Assembly (NCBI RefSeq): GCF_001194135.2
Contig: NC_068983.1
Location: 150,007,210 to 150,065,493, forward strand
Source of the DNA: Octopus bimaculoides
Taxonomy: Eukaryota
Reading direction: 5' to 3'
DNA: 58,284 nucleotides
The notes beneath the pieces were generated by a model that worked only from the letters and a program-made list of their open reading frames with translations, was not told where the DNA came from and made no database searches. Positions 10,637 through 52,900 of this stretch are shown here, piece after piece; the first letter of the stretch is position 1; each line of letters begins with the position of its first letter. The translations under genes were made by a program, and so were the position numbers.

Positions 10637-10736
10637 TTAAGATGGAGTCTTGTTGATGAATCTAGTCTTGTTGTTAACTTCAAGCTTTTCAAGTTCTCTC
10701 CACAGTTCTTCTCTGTCCTTCTCTCTTTTTTTCTCC
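10637..10736 (-). CDS. PPP2R5E: B56 terminal coding exon (R)EKKREKDREELWRELEKLEVNNKTRFINKTPS*
   Basis: Long U-rich tract then ...cgtgaag|G GAG AAA; completes the phase-2 codon; TAA at 10639-10637; matches EKK.EK.REELW..LE.L. Confidence 0.93.
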
Positions 10737-11049
10737 CTTCACGTTGAGAATTTCCAAAAAAAGAGAATAAAAACAAAACAAAAAAAATTATAAAAACAAA
10801 AATAAACAAAACAATTTCATTTGAAAGACATACAAAAGTTGATATTTTACACATTACACGCATATTTCCAACTGTTCAGAGGGTTCCCTACAAGTAGTTG
10901 ATAGCTTCCATTCTCCAGATGACTGATTTGCCACTGGAGGAGGAGAATGTTCCAGAAGCACATAGAGCAAGAACAAACAGCATAAGTTTGGGGAGCTTTT
11001 ACTTGTGCTTGCAACAAAGGGATTTTCTCACCAAGTAAGGAGTAGATTG

Positions 11050-18440: not shown

Positions 18441-18535
18441 TAATTACTGTACTTATTAAATAATTACAGTAATTAAAATATCCACAATTGATAGAGAATA
18501 CAGTCAGCAGAGAGAAAGAGAGAGAGAGAACTTAC

Positions 18536-18765
18536 CTTTGTCTTTCTGACTTGTAATTAGCAGATAGTTCATCAAAGAGCTTGGTATTCATTTCCATAAA
18601 TGTCTTAAGAACATTGTAGACCAGTGCAACTATAGTCTTATTCCAGTGATCCTTAGAGATATTGTAAAGAGATGAGAACATGATTGGCATTATCACAACG
18701 GCATTCTCCTCAATCAAACTCATGATATATTCATTGTTCCAGTAATATAGTGCTCTCTCAGCAAC
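18536..18765 (-). CDS. PPP2R5E: B56 exon [13 protein letters not shown]...[16 protein letters not shown]...YKSERQ(R)
   Basis: tttgcag|GTT GCT ... CAA AG|gtaag; 230 nt, phase 0 to 2. [10 protein letters not shown] is A/B/E-clade-like; gamma/delta have IHGLIYNALK. Confidence 0.98.
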
Positions 18766-20673: not shown

Positions 20674-20793
20674 CTGGAAATGTGGACTGGATACACAACG
20701 GGCTATTTGCCTGAACAGTGGATCCATGATTCTTTGAAAATGTGGTGGTTCTATCACATCAAGTATTTCTTCAATTTCACCAAGAAACATTAC
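20674..20793 (-). CDS. PPP2R5E: B56 exon [40 protein letters not shown]
   Basis: tttcttccag|GTA ATG ... TTC CAG|gtaaag; 120 nt, phase 0-0; lies within ORF 20617..20814. Confidence 0.98.

Positions 20794-27582: not shown

Positions 27583-27585
<3 letters not shown>

Positions 27586-27619
<34 letters not shown>
27586..27619. repeat. (TTA)n microsatellite
   Basis: About 11 tandem units, ~110 nt from exon copy B. Confidence 0.95.
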
Positions 27620-27731
27620 GATCCACAAAGGTCCAGGCAGGAGAGAGTTTGTTGACGCTGGGGTAGACACACGATATGTGAAGCTATTCAATTCTCCTCC
27701 GGGTTAAGCACAAAAAGCTTGAACATCTTAC

Positions 27732-27782
27732 CTCTTTTATGCTACACCTTTTAGGCCAGAATTTTAATAAAATTTTCACAAC
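27732..27782 (-). CDS. PPP2R5E: B56 duplicated exon, copy B: VVKILLKFWPKRCSIKE (candidate mutually exclusive alternative)
   Basis: tttctttttctttcag|GTT GTG ... AAA GAG|gtaaga; 51 nt, phase 0-0, no stop or indel; 38/51 nt and 13/17 aa identical to copy A. Confidence 0.85.
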
Positions 27783-27840
27783 CTGAAAGAAAAAGAAATT
27801 GATTTTTCTCTTTAGCAAATGAAATCATTGAAAACCTTAC

Positions 27841-27891
27841 CTCCTTTTGACTACATTGCTTAGGCCAGAATTTTAATAGTCCTTTCACAGC
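27841..27891 (-). CDS. PPP2R5E: B56 duplicated exon, copy A: AVKGLLKFWPKQCSQKE
   Basis: ttctttttcag|GCT GTG ... AAG GAG|gtaagg; 51 nt, phase 0-0; closest to the canonical V.RGL.KFWPKTCSQKE. Confidence 0.95.
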
Positions 27892-30800
27892 CTGAAAAAG
27901 AATAGCAAATTGAACTGCTTATTAGATTTGGTTAAAAGCTACTATTTCTGCAATTATAATTGATGTACAAATATTCAATTAAAAGGCATTTGTTTTTAAA
28001 TACACACACACAAATCAATTTGAATTTTAGACAATATTTGCAAAAGCAATACTATTCTGTTTCTGACTTGAACATCAAACATTTGATCCAGTTTTTCTTT
28101 TCATCTACACCATCATTATGGCCATCTGACACCACTTCCAATCTGCTGCAGTTTCAAATGATGATGAAACTAGTATATTGATCTCATTTCACAGTCACAA
28201 TCTAATAGAGGCTGATGTTTCAAGTTTTGCTTATAAACAACTAATAAAAATATTGTCAAACTAATTAATTTAGGATTTCTTAAAATCTGCCATGTTATTT
28301 ATCTTCAAAGGGAGATGTTTAAAGAATATTATTTAATATCTCTATTTTGTTGATTATCTCTAATATTCAACTGGCCAATTCTGTGCTATGGGTGTTCTTA
28401 AAATGAATCAAAGATAACTAATAATAGCATATCTTGGTTATCTTCTCTTACCAAAAGGAAGCTCTACACTGCTACTCTATTTGCTAGAAATATTGACGAA
28501 ATCTCCCTCAAATTACATCCTATAATCTTCAAAAAAAGGCAAGATTGTATAGTTTTAGACACACTATGCCAGGAAAAAAAATATGGTATGGTCATGATTG
28601 GAACGCTTTTGATCCTAGTTTCTGCTTGATCATAACTTGTTTGAAGCTAAACCAAAATAACATGATACAACACAATTTTGATAAGGAATAATTAATGGAA
28701 GTTAATACCTAAAACTGAATTAAAAAGCAGAAAAAACAAAAGCCCATGAATTCATGACAAAGACTATTTGTAGCTTACATAGAGGAAACAAACCAATGAG
28801 AGAATTTCTAAACAGCCACTTGATCGTCTAAATACAGTAGCTAAATCTTCTAGGGAAATGTCTTCATTTTCTTGAAAATAGGAACTACAAGCTTTTAAAT
28901 TATAAATCTTGGACTAGGATTTCACAATACAGACACAGTTGTCATGAATATAACAAATGGATAATTATTTAATCTGCTGTCATTGTGCTGAAGATGTATT
29001 GAAGCAGAGGTGAATAGCAGCTACTGAATAACAACCATCTATAAGTATCTTACATTACAAAAATAAACACACTATAATAAATTTAGTTTACTTCTGTGCT
29101 GAAATTATATTTTATGAGCATGAATTACCAATTGCATTTGACAAAATGAGCAGAGCCATAATAGTGCAAAGAAATAATTTCATCTAATTTATTCCTATAG
29201 TCTAGAAACTGCATCTGATATTTCCCCATAGACCTAAACAATCTTCATCATTCATATCTTTCAAGATATGAAAAATATTAAAAATCCAATGCTGAAAAAC
29301 TTCAGTATTATACTCAACAAAAAATGAAAGAATAGGATATTGTTCATAATGAGATCCAGGCAATATACTTTTCTATTTATATAATTGTTGGATAATAACA
29401 TTGAAACTGAATATATTTAAAGGCAATTGACCATAGCATATCAAGGAAGTCCTGAATCCTCAACCTATCAGAATTTTTTTTTTCTAAAGACTTATTTAAA
29501 AGAAGTAATTTTTTATTAAGAGCTTTAATAAAATTTATGGTGCAAACTGGAATTCAAAACCTATCTTTTCTTGTTAAAACAACTTAACTGACCTGTAGTT
29601 TAAAATAATTGCTAGAAGATAGATACAATTTCTGATTATAACAACTCATAAAATAGAACATATTAAAAAATGGTGATTACTTTAAAAGTCTATTAATTGA
29701 AAATATTTCTAAAACTTTGCAAATTTCTTTGAATACAGTAAAAAAAAACATCAAATGTTATGTTAAAACTAGCTCTCTGGCAAAAGACAAACTCATAAGT
29801 AAACTTAAAAAGTAAGGTCACTGTGACATTAATTACAAGAAGATCACATCAAGACACTGCTAAATAAAAAAAAAATATAGAAAAAGACTGTCAACAAGAA
29901 TTACAGGTAACATTTTATAGCCACAGGAATCAGGTTGTCTTATCAACTCAAATTAAAATTTTTGGAGAAAATAAATGATATTCTTAGCTCCTCATGTTAA
30001 GAATGAATGTAGCAGTAAGAGGTTGCTCTGCTGGTGAGACTTGGTAATTTTAAACTGAAGGTATACTGAGCTAACACATAGAACATTATACAGACAAATC
30101 ATCTCAGTTAGTTGTAGCCATTATTAGCTTTTGAACAAGACAATACCACCATACTAGACTGTTTAATTGAGAAAAGCAAGAGCATGATAGATAGGATGGA
30201 GGGCAAAGATAAAGCAAACAAGAACACCAGTAAACTGTGAGTATGAATGCATTCTTCAAATAAAAGATGGCTATTTTGAAGAATCTGAAATATAAGATAA
30301 TTTTGAGAAGTTGAATGCATATCTTCCAATGTATTATTTCAAAGATTAAAAATATATCTTCCTAATCAGTCCAAAATGCTCAAAACTCTTGAAATATTTG
30401 TTTTCAACAAGAGTTTAACAACTTGTGGGGGGAAAAAAAATATGGAAGAAGGAATTTAATGTCTAAAAATGCATGCAACTTTGAAAGATAAAGTGGATGC
30501 ATTTGTAAATATTTCCATGCACACATTATCTTGATTGTTGTCACAAAAATGACAAATAAAACACATTGACCTAAATTTTATCTAACCAAAACATTTAAAC
30601 CAGTCTATCAACCAATAGAAATGCTAACTCAACCACGTGGCTCAGACTGCCACTTATACAGCCTGATTTGTTATTCAACCACTAAACCATTGTCAGCCTT
30701 TACATGTTTGGTACATCTGTGTAATTTAGTTGACTGAGAGTGACAATAATGGAATTGGTAAGGTGCTAATCTTTTGGCTTCAGAGTAACCAGTTTATCAT

Positions 30801-32219: not shown

Positions 32220-32362
32220 ACTCTCTGAGTGGTTGGCGTTAGGAAGGGCATCCAGCTGTAGAAACTCTACCAAATTGGATTGGAGCCTGGTGTAGCCATC
32301 CGGTTGCACCAGTCCTCAGTCAAATCGTCCAACCCATGCTAGCATGGAAAGCGGACGTTAAA
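32220..32362 (+). mobile_element. 5'-truncated young RTE-related 3' end
   Basis: ctctctgagtggttggcgttagg...ccatgctagcatggaaagcggacgttaaac(gat)n. Confidence 0.88.
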
Positions 32363-32777
32363 CGATGATGATGATGATGATGCTTGTACTTGTGTCTTTC
32401 AGTGCTAAACCTTATTAAATGATTCTGCAATCTGAAGCAATATTTGTGGCAACTAAATGTTACTTAGGAGAGTAGGAGTGCCCAAGAGCTGATATAACAA
32501 GTTTGATTGAGGTTAAGTAGCTATTGAATCTTAGGTAGAATAGATTTGTCTTGTTTTCAAGTATAATGCAACGTTTGTGATAAGCTAGTAAGCCTATTAA
32601 CTGAATCACTCAATTGCTAGATCTTGGACAAATCAATGGTGCAGGTTCTAAAGTTCAAGCACACACAGGGCAGAAAGCAAGAGGTCAAAAGCAGTCAACA
32701 GAAATAAGAGTGGAATTACTATTCTTTTCTGGATTATCAAAAGTTTACTTCTTCCACCATTTTACATTCATTATCTT

Positions 32778-33046
32778 TCGTGCGAGATCGTTGCCGGTGC
32801 CCCTGGACTGGCTCCTGTGTGGGTGGCACATAAAAGACACCATTTCGAGCGTGGCCGTTTTCGTGCGGGTGACACGTAAAAGCACCCACTACACTCTCTG
32901 AGTGGTTGGCGTTAGGAAGGGCATTCAGCTGTAGAAACTCTGCCAAATTAGATTGGAGCCTGGTGTTGCCATCCGGTTTCACCAGTCCTCAGTCAAATTG
33001 TCCAACCCATGCTAGCATGGAAAGGGGACGTTAAACGATGATGATC
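32778..33046 (+). mobile_element. Young RTE-related 3' element
   Basis: Reverse complement of 5680-5960; ends ~145 nt from the donor of the 54-nt exon. Confidence 0.88.
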
Positions 33047-33188: not shown

Positions 33189-33242
33189 TTCTTCAGTAAG
33201 AGAGGCATCTTTCTCCAAGAACTGTACAACGCAGTATGCCAG
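33189..33242 (-). CDS. PPP2R5E: B56 exon LAYCVVQFLEKDASLTEE
   Basis: ttcttgttctttag|CTG GCA TAC ... GAA GAA|gtaagt; 54 nt, phase 0-0; too short for the ORF track; matches the conserved LAYC.VQFLEKD motif. Confidence 0.97.
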
Positions 33243-35535: not shown

Positions 35536-35644
35536 TTGTGCATGGTAAAGACTCAAGCTGCGAGCTTTATGCAATGGGATAAGAACCCTGATTAAAAACA
35601 ATTTGTGTTCTTGTTTCAATGGGAGGGCAAATCCATTAATGATG
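35536..35644 (-). CDS. PPP2R5E: PP2A B56 (B') regulatory subunit, most 5' exon visible: (S)[36 protein letters not shown]
   Basis: ttctttttcag|C ATC ATT ... GCA CAA|gtaagt; 109 nt, phase 2 to 0; matches the B56 signature [13 protein letters not shown]. Symbol denotes the A/B/E (widerborst) clade, not a proven 1:1 ortholog. Confidence 0.97.
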
Positions 35645-46618: not shown

Positions 46619-46695
<77 letters not shown>

Positions 46696-47122: not shown

Positions 47123-47172
<50 letters not shown>

Positions 47173-47962: not shown

Positions 47963-48816
47963 CAGTGCTTGGGCAAAATTTGACAGTTTGCATAAAAGGA
48001 AAAGAAAATATCCCATCCAAAAATAAAAGTATTTTTAAAAAATCAAAAAATATCAACTACATTATGGCTGGGAGAAAACATTTTACTCTAAGTAGCAGCT
48101 CCCAGCTTCCACTAAGGCTTCTCAAGATAGTTCCAGAACCTGGCACATGTGTGCCTCACTGTGTCCCTGGGAAGGTCTTTGAACACAGATTTGGTATTGC
48201 TGGCAGAGTGGTCAGTGTCTTTCTCATCCATGCCTCCACACAGTAATCCATGGGATTACAATCAGGGATTGGGAGGCCAGAAATTGGGGCTGGTGAAGTC
48301 ATAGAAATTCACCAACAAACATTTCTGACTCTTTCTAGAGGTATGGCCAGGAACCAGATCTTGCTGCCACACATAACCTTCCTGCAGCAACTCTATCCAG
48401 GGTTTGATCAAAGTCTCCAGCAGCTTCACAAAGCCATCTGAATTGAGCCCAAGGCCCTCTGCATCAGATCTGAGATGAATTCTGATGTGCAGACACAGTC
48501 AGAATGTCTGCTGTGTCTTTTCTTGCTGGCCATGGCTTCATAGTCTCTATTGCAGTTGTCCGTGTCATGTCTTACAGCCTTTACACTGTTTACAGAGCAT
48601 TGAGCAGCTGTCATGATATCAGCATTTTGATACTGGGGGTGAATTACCATGATGCAGGTAACTATTTTCCAGCATTCAGATGGCTTCCAGTCCTGCATGT
48701 TGGATAATTTTTTCTCAACTACACCTTTCATCTTTGTGCTCACTAATGCCATTGACTGTTCAAGCTGTTCCTGATAAAAGGAGTAGTTAAATCTGTCAAA
48801 TTTAGCCCATAAATAT
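47963..48816 (-). mobile_element. Internally deleted Tc1/mariner-superfamily transposon
   Basis: TIR core gggc(a/t)aaatttgacag at both ends; minus remnants QNADIMTAAQCSVNSVKAVRH and YVWQQD..GHTSRKSQK..VNFYDFTSPNFWPPN. Confidence 0.85.
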
Positions 48817-48820
48817 ATAT

Positions 48821-48969
48821 AGGTGCAGGCATGGCTTGCTTCCCAACCACATGGTTCTGGTTTCAGTCCCACTGTGTGGCACCTAGTGCAAGTGTCTTCT
48901 ACAATAGCCTCGGGCTAACCAAAGCCTTGTGAGTGGATTTAGTAGATGGAAACTGAAAGAAGCCGGTCG

Positions 48970-49025
<56 letters not shown>

Positions 49026-49212
49026 TTTGTGTCTGTATCCCTCACCATCGCTTGATAACTGATGATATGTTTACATACCCAAAACCTAGCAGTTCAGCAC
49101 TGATAGAATAAGTACCAAGCTTACAAGGAATAAGTCCTAGGGTCAATTTCTTTGACTAAAAGGCAGTGCTCCAGCATGGCTGCAGTCAAACGACTGAAAC
49201 TAATAAAAGAAT
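48821..49212 (+). mobile_element. SINE of the 36-423 family with internal (GT)n
   Basis: Head and tail motifs; abuts the transposon TIR. Confidence 0.85.
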
Positions 49213-49746
49213 AAATGGTGTCTGCTCCAACTTCACAGGTGACTGTTGCTTCCCTGTCAATGGCATTTTTGACTTTCCATTCAAGACCTCTCAGATGACC
49301 ATTTAGTCCTGTTGCAGATCTGAATGGTTTGAAGCATAGGTGTCAGGTGAAAATTCTAACTCACTGTGTGCTTCCAATGGAGTAAGTTAGCACACATTGA
49401 TACTCTTCCATTGCCACAGGACTTTCAGTAGATGGAATGACAACTGAGGTCACCATAAAGAGACACAGGCATATCATTAAATTGTAATGATAAATGCTTG
49501 CACACCATGAGTCTCCATGATTAATATCTAGTGACAGGCTGAAGGAAGGTGACCAGTAATCATGTGAAACCACAGGTCTCTCTCCTAGAAAGATGCAGTA
49601 ACAACAGCTAGGGGCCCATCACTCCCAGTGTTTTTACAGTATGCCTTGACCCCAACTAAAAGTATTTCTGCATCCCATATACTCCGAGTGTCATTACATA
49701 TACTAGTTAACCTATAGCTGGGACCCTGACAGGTGCCTACTACTCT

Positions 49747-49947
49747 GGGTCAGTGTAGACTTGGGAACAACAGTGGGTAAGAGGTGGTTCTACACTCCTC
49801 AAAATCCCGGAACCCCTGAACCACAGTTCTATTACCAGATGCAGTTTAAAGTCATCTGGTAATAGAACTGTGGTTCAGGGGTTCCGGGATTTTGAGGAGT
49901 GTAGAACCACCTCTTACCCACTGTTGTTCCCAAGTCTATGCTGACCC
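49747..49947. repeat. 95-bp near-perfect inverted repeat with 11-nt loop
   Basis: 49756-49841 is the exact reverse complement of 49853-49938; extends 9 more bp with 2 mismatches. Confidence 0.97.
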
Positions 49948-52900
49948 TTGCTGTGCCATTTTGTGCTTCTGATGAAGGTCATAAAATAAAAATGAGGTGA
50001 TTACTAAATAGAGGATACAGTTTTAATAAAATATAAGACATTTTATGCTTGCTCTAAGGAATCTAATACCAGCAATAAATAAAATATTTTCATAATAAGG
50101 ACACAACTGAGCTAATAAATATACTAGCAGTTTGGACAGCTTCAAGTTTATTTTATGTACTGAGTGAGAAATTCAAATTTTGGTATTAAATGGGAGGGTT
50201 AAATATTATGACAACCACATACATATAGTTAGTGTCTTTATATGAATTATTTTTTTCCATAAGGCTTTGAGAATTATTTGTTCATTTTTATGCATGCTTT
50301 TCTATGTTAGCATTGCTTTCATTTCTCTAGATTAGAATTAACAGAATAAAATGTCTATTATTATTTTTATAATTCATTAAAATGGGAAACTGATTGAAGA
50401 TTGAAATTTTAAGTAAGATGATACATGTGCACATGTATGCACACACATGTACTTTTATATAGTACTGTTCTGCTAATCTAGTCCCCTTTGGTTCTGGGGA
50501 GTGCCACATTTTCAAATCTGTTTGAGTATTGGAACTCCAGTTTAAAAACAACAAAATCACATTTTGTAACCAGGTCATCAAAAATGCAACCTCAATATCT
50601 GCCATCATTGTTTTCATTGGACAAAATAAGTTTATGAATGCAATATCATATTTTAAAGTTTGTAAATCACCAAACTGTCAACAAGTATGTCTTAGTTTTT
50701 ACCCAAACTTTATGTTTTCAATGGTCATTCACCCTGAAATTGACTTTTAAAAATGTCAGACACCAAGATCTTTGATTCTGAATCAGATATAAATCACATT
50801 AGTTACCTTTTGTTTTTAAAATACTATATTATTTCAATTCATAAGTGCAATTATGGAGTTAAATGGTTTCCTTTCACACCTTTCTTGAAATTGGCTAGTC
50901 TTATTAACAGTGGGTAATAGTTTTACTAATGGATGGACAAAGGCAGCATTTGAAACACTTAGGTACTGACCCTTTCAACTTGAAAGTAAACATAACAGAA
51001 TGATGTTGGCAGCCAATGACTGCCACATGTTGGTGGGAACATGAAGCACAACAAACAATGTCAGGCAATCAGGTCTGCCAGATTAATGGAACTTTATGAT
51101 GTTCTGGTAATTAAAGAGACTCTAAAGTTTTTTTTTTTATTACCACCTTAACTATAAACTAATAATCAGAATGAATTTCAATTTAAGTAAATAATATTGT
51201 GCCAATGAATAAATTTCTTGCTTGTAAATTCATCCCACCCCTACCAAATCGCTTATCACATTGTAGTATGATGAGGCTGACTTAAGAATATTAATATCTG
51301 CAGATAACATTAATAAGTTACTCATGAATGACTGTCAGAAGAATGGAGAAACCAAAAAACTTCTGTCTATTGATATTCATTATAAGTCTGATGTACTTCT
51401 TGTTTATATCAGAAAATAATGGTAAAAAAATGTATTTTAAGTCAAATAGTTGCAAAACCATGCTCTTAGCCCTTTTGATATGCTATTAACTTGTTCCAAA
51501 TACCAACCTAATAATGATAGTTATTTTATTAAATTCTTCATTTTCAAAATTAATTGAAATGAAAGTAGTGTATCTCAATAGGAAATATGGTAATAAAAGG
51601 ATTAAAAGATTAGATCATTTAAAATAAGGAAAATTATGACGCCATTCAGAGAGTATGTCATTTGAAAATATCTTTAACAATCTAGGTGATGATTTATTTG
51701 AATGTAGTAAAATCCATATTATAGGAATCTATAAGTTAGAAAAAAATTGCAAGTAAATCTTTTAGGAAAAAGAACATATTGATTTAAAAAAATAAAAAAG
51801 AAAACAAAGCCACAAATTTATCCAACACATTTGAATAAATTTGATCTAAATTATACAAAATATGAGACATTTTCCAGATTCAAACTATGCAAAAAATAAT
51901 GAAAACTAGTTTGAAAACAAGGGTACTAAAAGATTGACCAACAATTTTATGAGGCAAAAAGCAGGTTTTAAATAAAATCTCCCTTTCTACTTACATGTAA
52001 ACAGTACAGGGTATATTTACCAAAAATTAAAGCAAATATTGTCAGAGCTTTCTGCACTACAAACTGTGTCAATGATTTATTTATATTAGAGGATCATTGA
52101 AAACCAAAGTAATGCTTGGAATGAAAAGTTATGGATTAACCAACAAATTAGTAATCATAGCAAACAGGAAAGAGATAAACATGGTCAGGCCCACTAAACT
52201 AAAACCAAGCCAGCTGACTATCCCAGAGTTAAAATGTAAACAAAGATTGATATCCAACTAGATCAAAAGATTAATTGAATCATACCAAAACATGGTTGTT
52301 TCTTCTTTCTTAGTACATTAGAACTACACTTTCTCAGGCAGTTGTAAGGTCAGTTTGACCTTAAAGCAAATTCTTTGAATAGGCATGGTTAGTGTAAAGA
52401 TTGGTTCCAAGCAAGCATATCTGTGATTCAGTTTCAACTCCTGATTGTAGTTGATTTCTCTTTCACCTATATAACGAGTGCACTTTTTGAGTAGTACTGA
52501 CCAACAATCCTTTTCTTCTTGTATTAAATCTGAGATTTTGTCTTTTCTATTATTCAAAACAATGATTTCTTAATAGACAATCTGAATTAGCAGTTTCATA
52601 TTTAGTACCAAAAAAAAAAAAAAAAGCCTTGATAATAAATATAAGCAATACATGTACAGATGCACCCACATGCACATACAAGATGCTAGAGTTCATCCAA
52701 TGTATTAAATGATTTCTTTTAAAACAATTTAGTACAGATTAACATTTAAAGTACATTTAGTTTCAAGCAGCCAATAAGGAATTGAATTTGAAACATTAAT
52801 AAATGTCTTGGAAAATATGTACAACTATACAAATTAATAGAGTTACACATATTCTCCAAGAATTATGTCTTTAGTGTATCTTTCACCACCACTGCTATAA

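What the first reader, a model, noticed from the sequence alone, without database searches (positions are those of the whole stretch)
27732..27891. Tandemly duplicated, apparently co-maintained exon in PP2A-B56: candidate mutually exclusive exon pair
Seen: two 51-nt phase-0 exons 109 nt apart, both with intact AG and GTAAG sites and homologous flanks (tcaattt...ttcag; gtaag.t.ttc). They differ at 13 of 51 nt with no indels or stops. Four of the 13 conserved codons carry synonymous changes, so the duplication is old but both copies keep LLKFWPK.CS.KE. Established: vertebrate B56 genes encode this segment once, inside the HEAT-like scaffold. Inference: two B56 isoforms are made by mutually exclusive splicing, and short-exon annotation could miss one. 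I know of no report of this but cannot search the literature.
Basis: partly seen in the sequence, partly recalled or inferred. Interest (0 to 1): 0.85.

Follow-up and report, generated by a model that had tools for sequence, protein, structure and literature searches.

The report
Octopus PP2A-B56 alternative exon pair
An octopus gene for a regulatory subunit of protein phosphatase 2A carries two tandem copies of a 51-base exon that are used one at a time; this is real, but both resulting proteins are already in public databases, so it is an ordinary example of a well-known kind of alternative splicing.

Summary
On the minus strand, exon A (27891..27841, AVKGLLKFWPKQCSQKE) and exon B (27782..27732, VVKILLKFWPKRCSIKE) are both 51 nt, phase 0, and flanked by ttcag|G and GAG|gtaag. 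They differ at 13 nt (4 amino acids, 4 synonymous changes) and are separated by a 58-nt intron.

They lie in the 3' half of an alpha/beta/epsilon-type PP2A B56 gene. The mutually exclusive reading is supported by existing annotation:
- The 462-aa exon-A isoform is XP_029634249.1 and XP_052822585.1.
- The 462-aa exon-B isoform is XP_036356998.1, XP_052822586.1 and CAI9719576.1.
- Together these cover Octopus sinensis, O. bimaculoides and O. vulgaris.
- Hypothetical A+B and skip-both proteins are absent from the collection.

The 58-nt intron puts any branch point about 21-29 nt from the exon-A donor, so steric hindrance is the likely enforcing mechanism (inferred).

Every other animal sampled has one copy. 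Cuttlefish transcripts and the Argonauta protein model show only exon A. How far exon B extends beyond Octopus, and whether it has a distinct function, could not be tested.

I found no paper on it. Novelty is low: a database-annotated tandem-duplicated exon pair.

The parts
27841..27891 (-). Exon A, 51 nt, phase 0, AVKGLLKFWPKQCSQKE. This is the consensus-like copy, used in the RefSeq X1 isoforms and in cuttlefish transcripts.
   Evidence: Present in P0242, P0360 and P0362 and in Sepia transcripts L002-L021.
27783..27840 (-). 58-nt intron between exons A and B: gtaagg…ctttcag. Candidate branch adenosines lie at +21 (TTCAT) and +29 (CTAA) from the exon-A donor.
   Evidence: The steric criterion of under 50 nt from donor to branch point comes from PMC5740500.
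27732..27782 (-). Exon B, 51 nt, phase 0, VVKILLKFWPKRCSIKE. This is the derived copy, used in RefSeq X2 and in O. vulgaris CAI9719576.1.
   Evidence: Present in P0359.
27710..27913 (-). The two tandem ~109-nt duplication units. Each holds about 22 nt of acceptor-side intron, the exon, and about 22 nt of recognisable donor-side intron.
   Evidence: Alignment A1, D2, flank identities.
33189..33242 (-). Upstream constitutive exon, LAYCVVQFLEKDASLTEE. It contains the residue equivalent to acidic-patch residue E276 of human B56 gamma.
   Evidence: PMC7108865.
20674..20793 (-). Downstream constitutive exon, [20 protein letters not shown]…SPHFQ. It contains the equivalents of acidic-patch residues E310, D313 and E316 of human B56 gamma.
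35536..35644 (-). Exon (S)[14 protein letters not shown]…YHAQ. This is the first B56 exon found inside the window; the N-terminal half of the gene lies outside it.
18536..18765 (-). Exon [21 protein letters not shown]…YKSERQ(R). Reading through its donor gives AGG TAA, an immediate stop, which explains the annotated 430-aa isoform.
   Evidence: P0360 ends …SERQR.
10637..10736 (-). Last coding exon, EKKREKDREELWRELEKLEVNNKTRFINKTPS plus the stop codon.

Best explanation
The window holds the 3' half of an octopus PP2A B56 (B') regulatory-subunit gene of the alpha/beta/epsilon type, on the minus strand. A ~109-nt tandem duplication copied the 51-nt exon that encodes the outer helix and following loop of HEAT-like repeat 6.

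The two copies are spliced in a mutually exclusive way:
- 33189>27891 with 27841>20793 gives the exon-A isoform.
- 33189>27782 with 27732>20793 gives the exon-B isoform.

Both products are 462 aa and differ at four residues: A297V, G300I, Q308R and Q311I.

Joint inclusion would need removal of the 58-nt A-B intron. Its branch point can be no more than about 21-40 nt from the exon-A donor, which is too close for two spliceosomal complexes. Steric hindrance is therefore the likely reason only one copy is used.

Isoform A keeps the pan-metazoan consensus. Isoform B replaces two nearly invariant residues on a helix-loop that sits between the two helices forming the B56 acidic patch. That could tune holoenzyme or substrate interactions.

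Shown: the anatomy, the gene identity, and the existence of both annotated isoforms in three Octopus species.

Inferred: the steric mechanism, and any functional difference between the isoforms.
For: - Anatomy and splice sites.
- Gene identity: tblastn to B56; PF01603 on all homologues; PDB matches to B56 epsilon (8uwb) and B56 alpha (6nts) at E~1e-229.
- Both isoforms on record, at 462 aa each:
  - P0242 = XP_029634249.1 / XP_052822585.1 (exon A).
  - P0359 = XP_036356998.1 / XP_052822586.1 / CAI9719576.1 / UniRef100_A0AA36AQ76 (exon B).
- In the O. vulgaris annotation, alternative forms were added only through PASA updates from Iso-Seq and RNA-seq (PMC10700109).
- The both-included and both-skipped proteins are not in a 15-billion-protein collection.
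- The A-B intron is 58 nt, with candidate branch points at +21 and +29. Donor-to-branch-point distance under 50 nt is the published criterion for steric interference (PMC5740500).
- Neutral flanks have decayed while exon and splice signals are kept.
- AF2 models the isoform-B segment confidently as helix 291-303, loop 304-310, helix 311-324, with pLDDT 84-94.
- G300 and Q311 are at least 90% conserved in 32 diverse B56 proteins.
- The acidic-patch residues lie in the flanking exons.
Against: - No raw junction reads were seen. Support for exon-B usage rests on annotation models. I know from general knowledge, but did not verify here, that Gnomon builds alternative variants from transcript evidence.
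- No Logan RNA-seq-derived Octopus protein with either exon turned up in three searches.
- Cuttlefish transcripts from at least 115 runs or blocks carry only exon A. So does the single Argonauta hians model. Exon B may therefore be young or little used outside Octopus.
- Exon B changes two near-invariant residues, which also fits relaxed constraint.
- A 58-nt intron is spliceable in some invertebrates, so the steric block is not proven for cephalopods.
Confidence: 0.85

Rival explanations
1. Exon B is a duplicated exon that is still spliceable but effectively neutral. It is included at low level as splicing noise, and annotation pipelines picked it up. Only the exon-A protein matters functionally.
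For: - Exon B replaces G300 and Q311, both at least 90% conserved across alpha/beta/epsilon-type B56 proteins.
- Only exon A is seen in cuttlefish transcripts and in the Argonauta model.
- No exon-B fragment appeared among assembled RNA-seq proteins.
- dN/dS between the copies is not clearly below 1: four changed codons against four synonymous changes in 17 codons.
Against: - The reading frame, both splice sites and the polypyrimidine tract are intact, although 25% of exon positions differ and the neutral flank has decayed to random (4/22 and 6/22).
- The core LLKFWPK.CS.KE is kept.
- The exon-B peptide is identical in three Octopus species.
- The full-length O. vulgaris model is the exon-B form (CAI9719576.1), and two independent RefSeq runs also produced it.
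Confidence: 0.12
2. Both exons are normally included together, giving a B56 protein with a tandemly repeated 17-residue segment.
For: Both exons are multiples of 3, so joint inclusion stays in frame.
Against: - The 479-aa A+B protein is absent from the collection, while both single-exon forms are present.
- The A-B intron is only 58 nt.
- An extra helix would break the regular two-helix repeat modelled.
- No other animal has a repeated segment here.
Confidence: 0.02
3. Mutual exclusivity is enforced not sterically but by competing RNA secondary structures (docking site and selector sequences, as in Dscam or 14-3-3 xi) or by tissue-specific splicing factors.
For: Exon A shows fewer synonymous differences between octopus and cuttlefish than the rest of the gene: 2/16 against 79/180 codons, one-sided Fisher p=0.011. 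That could reflect RNA-level constraint. Trans-acting regulation of which exon is chosen is likely in any case.
Against: - No convincing long-range complementarity involves the exon pair. The only arms nearby are A/T-rich 20-23-mers of the kind expected by chance (I15 and I16).
- The 241-nt cluster folds no better than shuffles, z = -1.07.
- The synonymous signal is weak, since a window in the upstream exon is equally low.
- One species is too little to judge covariation.
Confidence: 0.15

Closest known systems
Mutually exclusive exon pairs from tandem exon duplication with steric interference, e.g. alpha-tropomyosin exons 2/3 and the ~9% of human MXE clusters flagged in PMC5740500
   Same: - Adjacent homologous exons of identical length and phase.
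- Each exon has its own splice sites.
- The intervening intron is too short to place a branch point 50 nt or more from the upstream donor.
- The isoforms differ by a like-for-like substitution of one structural element.
   Different: - Both exons are divisible by 3, so NMD cannot police errors.
- The host gene (B56) is not among the human MXE genes in the main text of that survey.
- The steric rule has not been calibrated for cephalopod spliceosomes.
Human PP2A B56 epsilon and alpha (PPP2R5E, PPP2R5A; PDB 8uwb, 6nts)
   Same: Over 80% identical across the whole B56 core. They have the same helix-loop-helix at this position and the same flanking acidic-patch residues.
   Different: Vertebrates diversify B56 through five paralogous genes and encode this segment once per gene. 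Octopus additionally diversifies one gene through an exon pair.
Alternative 4-residue insertion at the same exon junction in bivalve B56 isoforms (…LTEA-VSIE-VVNGLLKLWPK…)
   Same: It is alternative splicing at the boundary just upstream of the same 17-residue segment, in another mollusc class (P0258, P0283, P0306, P0308).
   Different: It is an insertion, most simply an alternative donor 12 nt downstream. It is not an exon substitution and involves no duplicated exon.

Membership tests
Mutually exclusive exon (MXE) cluster from tandem exon duplication | Adjacent exons that are homologous in sequence | tested here: met
   38/51 nt and 13/17 aa are identical. The repeat is 75 nt at 77% identity with 109-nt spacing.
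Mutually exclusive exon (MXE) cluster from tandem exon duplication | Same length and same reading phase, compatible with both neighbouring exons | tested here: met
   Both are 51 nt and phase 0. Either one joins LTEE| to |VMFLG in frame.
Mutually exclusive exon (MXE) cluster from tandem exon duplication | Each exon has its own functional-looking splice sites | tested here: met
   Acceptors are ctattctttttcag|G and tttctttttctttcag|G. Donors are GAG|gtaagg and GAG|gtaaga.
Mutually exclusive exon (MXE) cluster from tandem exon duplication | Mature transcripts contain exactly one of the exons | tested here: inconclusive
   - Annotated proteins with A only and B only exist in three Octopus species.
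- The A+B and skip-both proteins are not on record.
- This is annotation-level evidence; no junction reads were available.
Mutually exclusive exon (MXE) cluster from tandem exon duplication | Both copies kept by selection in related species | tested here: inconclusive
   The exon-B peptide is identical in O. sinensis, O. bimaculoides and O. vulgaris. Genomic DNA of other cephalopods could not be fetched because the gene range exceeds 100 kb. Sepia and Argonauta records show exon A only.
MXE enforced by steric interference | Distance from upstream donor to downstream branch point under ~50 nt | tested here: met
   The whole intron is 58 nt, with candidate branch A at +21 or +29. The criterion is from PMC5740500. 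Whether the threshold holds in cephalopods was not testable.
MXE enforced by frame disruption and NMD | Exon length not divisible by 3 | tested here: not met
   51 = 3 x 17 for both exons.
MXE enforced by U2/U12 splice-site incompatibility | One intron of U12 type (AT-AC, or GT-AG with the /RTATCCTT donor) | tested here: not met
   All four splice sites are U2-type GT-AG with gtaag donors.
MXE enforced by competing RNA structures (docking and selector type) | A conserved docking sequence complementary to a selector next to each exon | tested here: inconclusive
   Only weak A/T-rich inverted repeats lie near the pair. The local fold has z = -1.07. There was no second species for a covariation test.
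PP2A regulatory subunit B56/B' (Pfam PF01603), alpha/beta/epsilon subclass | B56 domain with the subclass motif …GLLKFWPKTCSQKE… (gamma/delta have …LLK[FY]WPK[TV]HSPKE…) | tested here: met
   - PF01603 is found on all homologues.
- The best PDB matches are B56 epsilon and alpha at E~1e-229.

The most novel reading that the evidence does not exclude
Exon B is a lineage-specific innovation (Octopus or octopod) that creates a second, functionally distinct PP2A-B56 holoenzyme from one gene. It swaps the outer helix and loop of HEAT-like repeat 6, which is packed between the two helices that form the acidic patch. Two near-invariant residues become isoleucine and an arginine is added. This could change affinity for basic-patch-dependent LxxIxE partners or for the A/C core, possibly in a tissue-specific way such as in neurons. 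It would be a splicing-based counterpart to the vertebrate expansion of B56 paralogues.
Probability: 0.3. Interest if true: 0.5.

Novelty: already known. Interest (0 to 1): 0.25.

Why it matters
PP2A-B56 is a central phosphatase whose B56 subunit selects substrates through the LxxIxE pocket and the neighbouring acidic patch. Vertebrates diversify it through five genes. An invertebrate diversifying the same structural element through an exon pair would give a natural four-residue 'mutant' for asking what this helix-loop contributes.

As it stands, the pair is already captured by RefSeq and ENA annotation, and it belongs to a textbook class: tandem exon duplication leading to mutually exclusive splicing. 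Its value lies in three things:
- a clean worked example;
- a likely case of steric enforcement where NMD cannot help, because both exons are multiples of three;
- a pointer to an unstudied isoform difference.

Tried and rejected
1. **Exon-B protein fragments.** I searched the 5.8-billion-protein collection for exon-B fragments of 50-611 aa. The only exon-B protein found was P0359 and its identical accessions, among the members of cluster 1. No RNA-seq-derived Octopus fragments appeared.

2. **Genomic loci from other genomes.** I tried to fetch loci from O. vulgaris and Argonauta hians. The gene spans 272 kb and 164 kb respectively, so no DNA was returned.

3. **Exact look-ups of window ORFs.** I looked up ORFs next to or overlapping the exon pair, and the large downstream exon, to find whole-genome-shotgun contigs of relatives. 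None is on record.

4. **Metagenome scan.** A scan of metagenome contigs with a 26-nt pattern matching both copies gave 0 hits.

5. **The one cuttlefish-like contig with unspliced sequence.** L001 has an intron retained upstream of the VMFLG exon and does not reach the exon pair.

6. **Docking/selector RNA structures.** Inverted repeats and the local fold showed nothing above chance.

7. **A third, decayed copy of the exon.** None was found.

8. **Dating the duplication from synonymous sites.** Octopus A differs from B at 4/12 codons, octopus A from cuttlefish A at 2/16, and B from cuttlefish A at 3/12. These numbers are too small to decide.

9. **Low synonymous divergence in exon A.** This hint of RNA-level constraint was kept only as weak evidence, because a window in the upstream exon is equally conserved.

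10. **Literature.** Searches for B56 or PPP2R5 with mutually exclusive exons, and for cephalopod or octopus MXEs, found nothing relevant.

Full report
**1. Observation**

Reading the minus strand shows two exon-like blocks.
- Exon A, 27891..27841: GCTGTGAAAGGACTATTAAAATTCTGGCCTAAGCAATGTAGTCAAAAGGAG, encoding AVKGLLKFWPKQCSQKE.
- Exon B, 27782..27732: GTTGTGAAAATTTTATTAAAATTCTGGCCTAAAAGGTGTAGCATAAAAGAG, encoding VVKILLKFWPKRCSIKE.

Both follow a pyrimidine tract ending in ttcag, and both are followed by gtaag. A codon-by-codon comparison gives:
- 13 differing nucleotides, with no indel or stop;
- four changed residues: A/V at position 1, G/I at 4, Q/R at 12, Q/I at 15;
- four synonymous changes among the 13 conserved codons.

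The start-to-start distance is 109 nt, so the intron between the exons is 58 nt. The repeat finder recovers the pair on its own as a 75-nt direct repeat, 77% identical (D2). A search with three mismatches finds no third copy.

Flank homology extends about 22 nt on each side (alignment A1; 15/22 downstream). It is gone beyond that (4/22 and 6/22).

**2. Gene context**

- 35644..35536
- 33242..33189 (LAYCVVQFLEKDASLTEE)
- exon A or exon B
- 20793..20674 ([12 protein letters not shown]…PHFQ)
- 18765..18536
- 10736..10637 (ending in a stop codon)

The N-terminal half of the gene is outside the window. In O. vulgaris the gene spans 272 kb.

The assembled protein is over 80% identical to human B56 epsilon (PDB 8uwb) and B56 alpha (6nts), with E~1e-229. 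It carries the alpha/beta/epsilon-type motif rather than the gamma/delta-type …HSPKE motif.

**3. Both isoforms are already annotated**

A search with a 349-aa query returned P0242 at 97% identity (462 aa). Its 90% cluster contains two 462-aa proteins that are identical except for the 17-residue segment.
- P0242 carries exon A: XP_029634249.1 and XP_052822585.1.
- P0359 carries exon B: XP_036356998.1, XP_052822586.1, CAI9719576.1 and UniRef100_A0AA36AQ76.

These cover O. sinensis, O. bimaculoides (isoforms X1 and X2) and O. vulgaris.

The cluster also holds a 430-aa form with exon A (CAI9719577.1, XP_052822587.1). It ends at …SERQR. This is explained by reading through the donor of exon 18765..18536, which gives AGG TAA.

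The O. vulgaris genome paper states that alternative forms were added only through PASA updates from Iso-Seq and RNA-seq (PMC10700109). From general knowledge, not checked here, NCBI's Gnomon also derives alternative variants from transcript evidence.

Exact look-ups of the hypothetical A+B (479 aa) and skip-both (445 aa) proteins find nothing. The mutually exclusive reading is therefore supported, but at the level of annotation. I saw no junction reads.

**4. Distribution**

In about 350 B56 proteins from animals and fungi, the segment occurs once. The alpha/beta/epsilon consensus is V[IV][KR]GLLKFWPKTCSQKE.

Twenty full-length transcripts from a second cephalopod cluster (L002-L021) all carry exon A. 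P0363 is indexed in 96 blocks and P0243 in 19. Two of the runs are Sepia esculenta larvae (PMC10466719).

The single Argonauta hians model carries an exon-A variant, AMKG… (P0361; the assembly was identified through PMC13652810).

Absence of exon B in these records is weak evidence. I could not obtain genomic DNA for any of them. The age of the duplication is therefore open. It is at least as old as the common ancestor of the three Octopus species. It is also old enough for the non-signal parts of the duplicated unit to have randomised.

**5. Mechanism of exclusivity (inferred)**

Both exons are multiples of three, so neither double inclusion nor double skipping would trigger NMD. All splice sites are U2-type.

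The A-B intron is only 58 nt, and its candidate branch points are at +21 (TTCAT) and +29 (CTAA). Any branch point must lie well under 50 nt from the exon-A donor. That is the criterion for steric interference used in the human MXE survey (PMC5740500).

I found no sign of docking/selector RNA pairing and no unusually stable local structure (z = -1.07). One species cannot settle that question.

Which exon is chosen in a given cell presumably depends on trans-acting factors. Nothing here addresses that.

**6. What the swap changes in the protein (inferred)**

AlphaFold2 on isoform B, with a 32-sequence alignment, models helix 276-289, helix 291-303, loop 304-310 and helix 311-324. pLDDT is 84-94 over this stretch.

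The variable residues are placed as follows:
- 297 and 300 lie one turn apart on the helix encoded by the alternative exon.
- 308 lies in the loop.
- 311 lies at the start of the next helix.

The B56 acidic patch that binds basic patches next to LxxIxE motifs is formed by E276, E310, D313 and E316 of B56 gamma (PMC7108865). These residues fall in the two constitutive exons that flank the alternative one; their octopus equivalents are E288, E322, D325 and E328.

Those two helices line the concave face. By the alternation of helices in a HEAT-like solenoid, the alternative helix should belong to the outer layer. According to a review, that outer layer is the side of B56 that contacts the scaffold subunit (PMC6406801). 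I had no coordinates to check side-chain orientation.

Isoform A matches the consensus at positions 300 (G) and 311 (Q). Both positions are at least 90% conserved in the alignment, and isoform B has isoleucine at both. The same two positions also differ between the alpha/beta/epsilon and gamma/delta subclasses. This fits either functional specialisation or relaxed constraint.

**7. Weak extra signal**

Between octopus and cuttlefish, exon A has 2 synonymously different codons out of 16. The rest of the compared coding sequence has 79 out of 180 (one-sided Fisher p=0.011; pS 0.22 against about 0.66).

Reduced synonymous change is typical of regulated alternative exons, and in cephalopods also of RNA-editing substrates. 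A stretch in the upstream exon is just as conserved, so I treat this only as a hint.

**8. Verdict**

Its novelty was overestimated, because both isoforms already have RefSeq, ENA and UniProt accessions.

I found no paper describing the pair, and PPP2R5 is not mentioned in the main text of the human MXE survey.

It is a database-annotated instance of a well-known mechanism. A plausible but untested steric enforcement and an unstudied four-residue isoform difference are the only open points.

Noticed in passing
window 18536..18523 (minus strand), donor of exon 18765..18536: Reading through this donor gives …CAA AGG TAA, an immediate stop built from the GTAAG donor. This explains the annotated 430-aa isoform ending …SERQR (P0360: CAI9719577.1, XP_052822587.1), which lacks the last 32 residues.
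   Followed up: yes
window 27841..27891 compared with L002-L021: Exon A differs from the cuttlefish exon at only 2 of 51 nt. The neighbouring exons differ at 13/54 and 20/120 nt, all or mostly synonymous. This may reflect RNA-level constraint (splicing signals or editing), but a stretch in exon 35644..35536 is equally conserved.
   Followed up: partly
P0258, P0283, P0306, P0308 (bivalve-like RefSeq isoforms): Some isoforms insert four residues (VSIE or VSMI) exactly at the junction upstream of the same 17-residue segment. This looks like an alternative donor 12 nt into the intron, so the junction is alternatively spliced in another mollusc class too.
   Followed up: no
window 27585..27620: An (AAT)n microsatellite of about 12 units lies roughly 110 nt downstream of the exon-B donor, inside the 6.9-kb intron.
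   Followed up: no
window 32220..32372 and 32893..33045: Two 153-nt direct repeat copies, 95% identical and 673 nt apart, lie in the 5.3-kb intron between exon 33242..33189 and exon A. They are probably a young interspersed or segmental repeat.
   Followed up: no
L001 1..310 (Logan ERR4009593): A cuttlefish-like transcript contig has about 310 nt of unspliced intron immediately upstream of the VMFLG exon, but is correctly spliced downstream. This is either a retained intron or an internal start.
   Followed up: partly
P0365 (Logan, 472 aa): One member of the second cephalopod (Sepia-like) cluster carries a 10-residue insertion, AREAKEYQLK, after …WPHLQ. This suggests another small alternative exon or a retained segment in the N-terminal half of the gene.
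   Followed up: no
P0121 (Wuchereria bancrofti) and P0241 (Cooperia oncophora): These nematode B56 records score far above their identity. P0121 repeats part of the B56 core at its end (…[15 protein letters not shown]… occurs twice). P0241 was not inspected for this. It looks like a local duplication or a gene-model or assembly artefact.
   Followed up: no
window 46621..46692, 47126..47168, 48978..49036; 48000..50000: Three dinucleotide microsatellites, (TA)36, (AC)21 and (TG)29, flank the most GC-rich stretch of the window (43% GC). It lies within what should be a very large intron of the same gene, and a 148-aa ORF sits at 48426..48872 on the minus strand.
   Followed up: no
window 10737..10760 (minus strand), acceptor of the last coding exon: The acceptor …ggaaattctcaacgtgaag|G has a poor pyrimidine tract immediately upstream, unlike all other acceptors of the gene in the window. 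The T-rich stretch lies about 20-45 nt further upstream.
   Followed up: no
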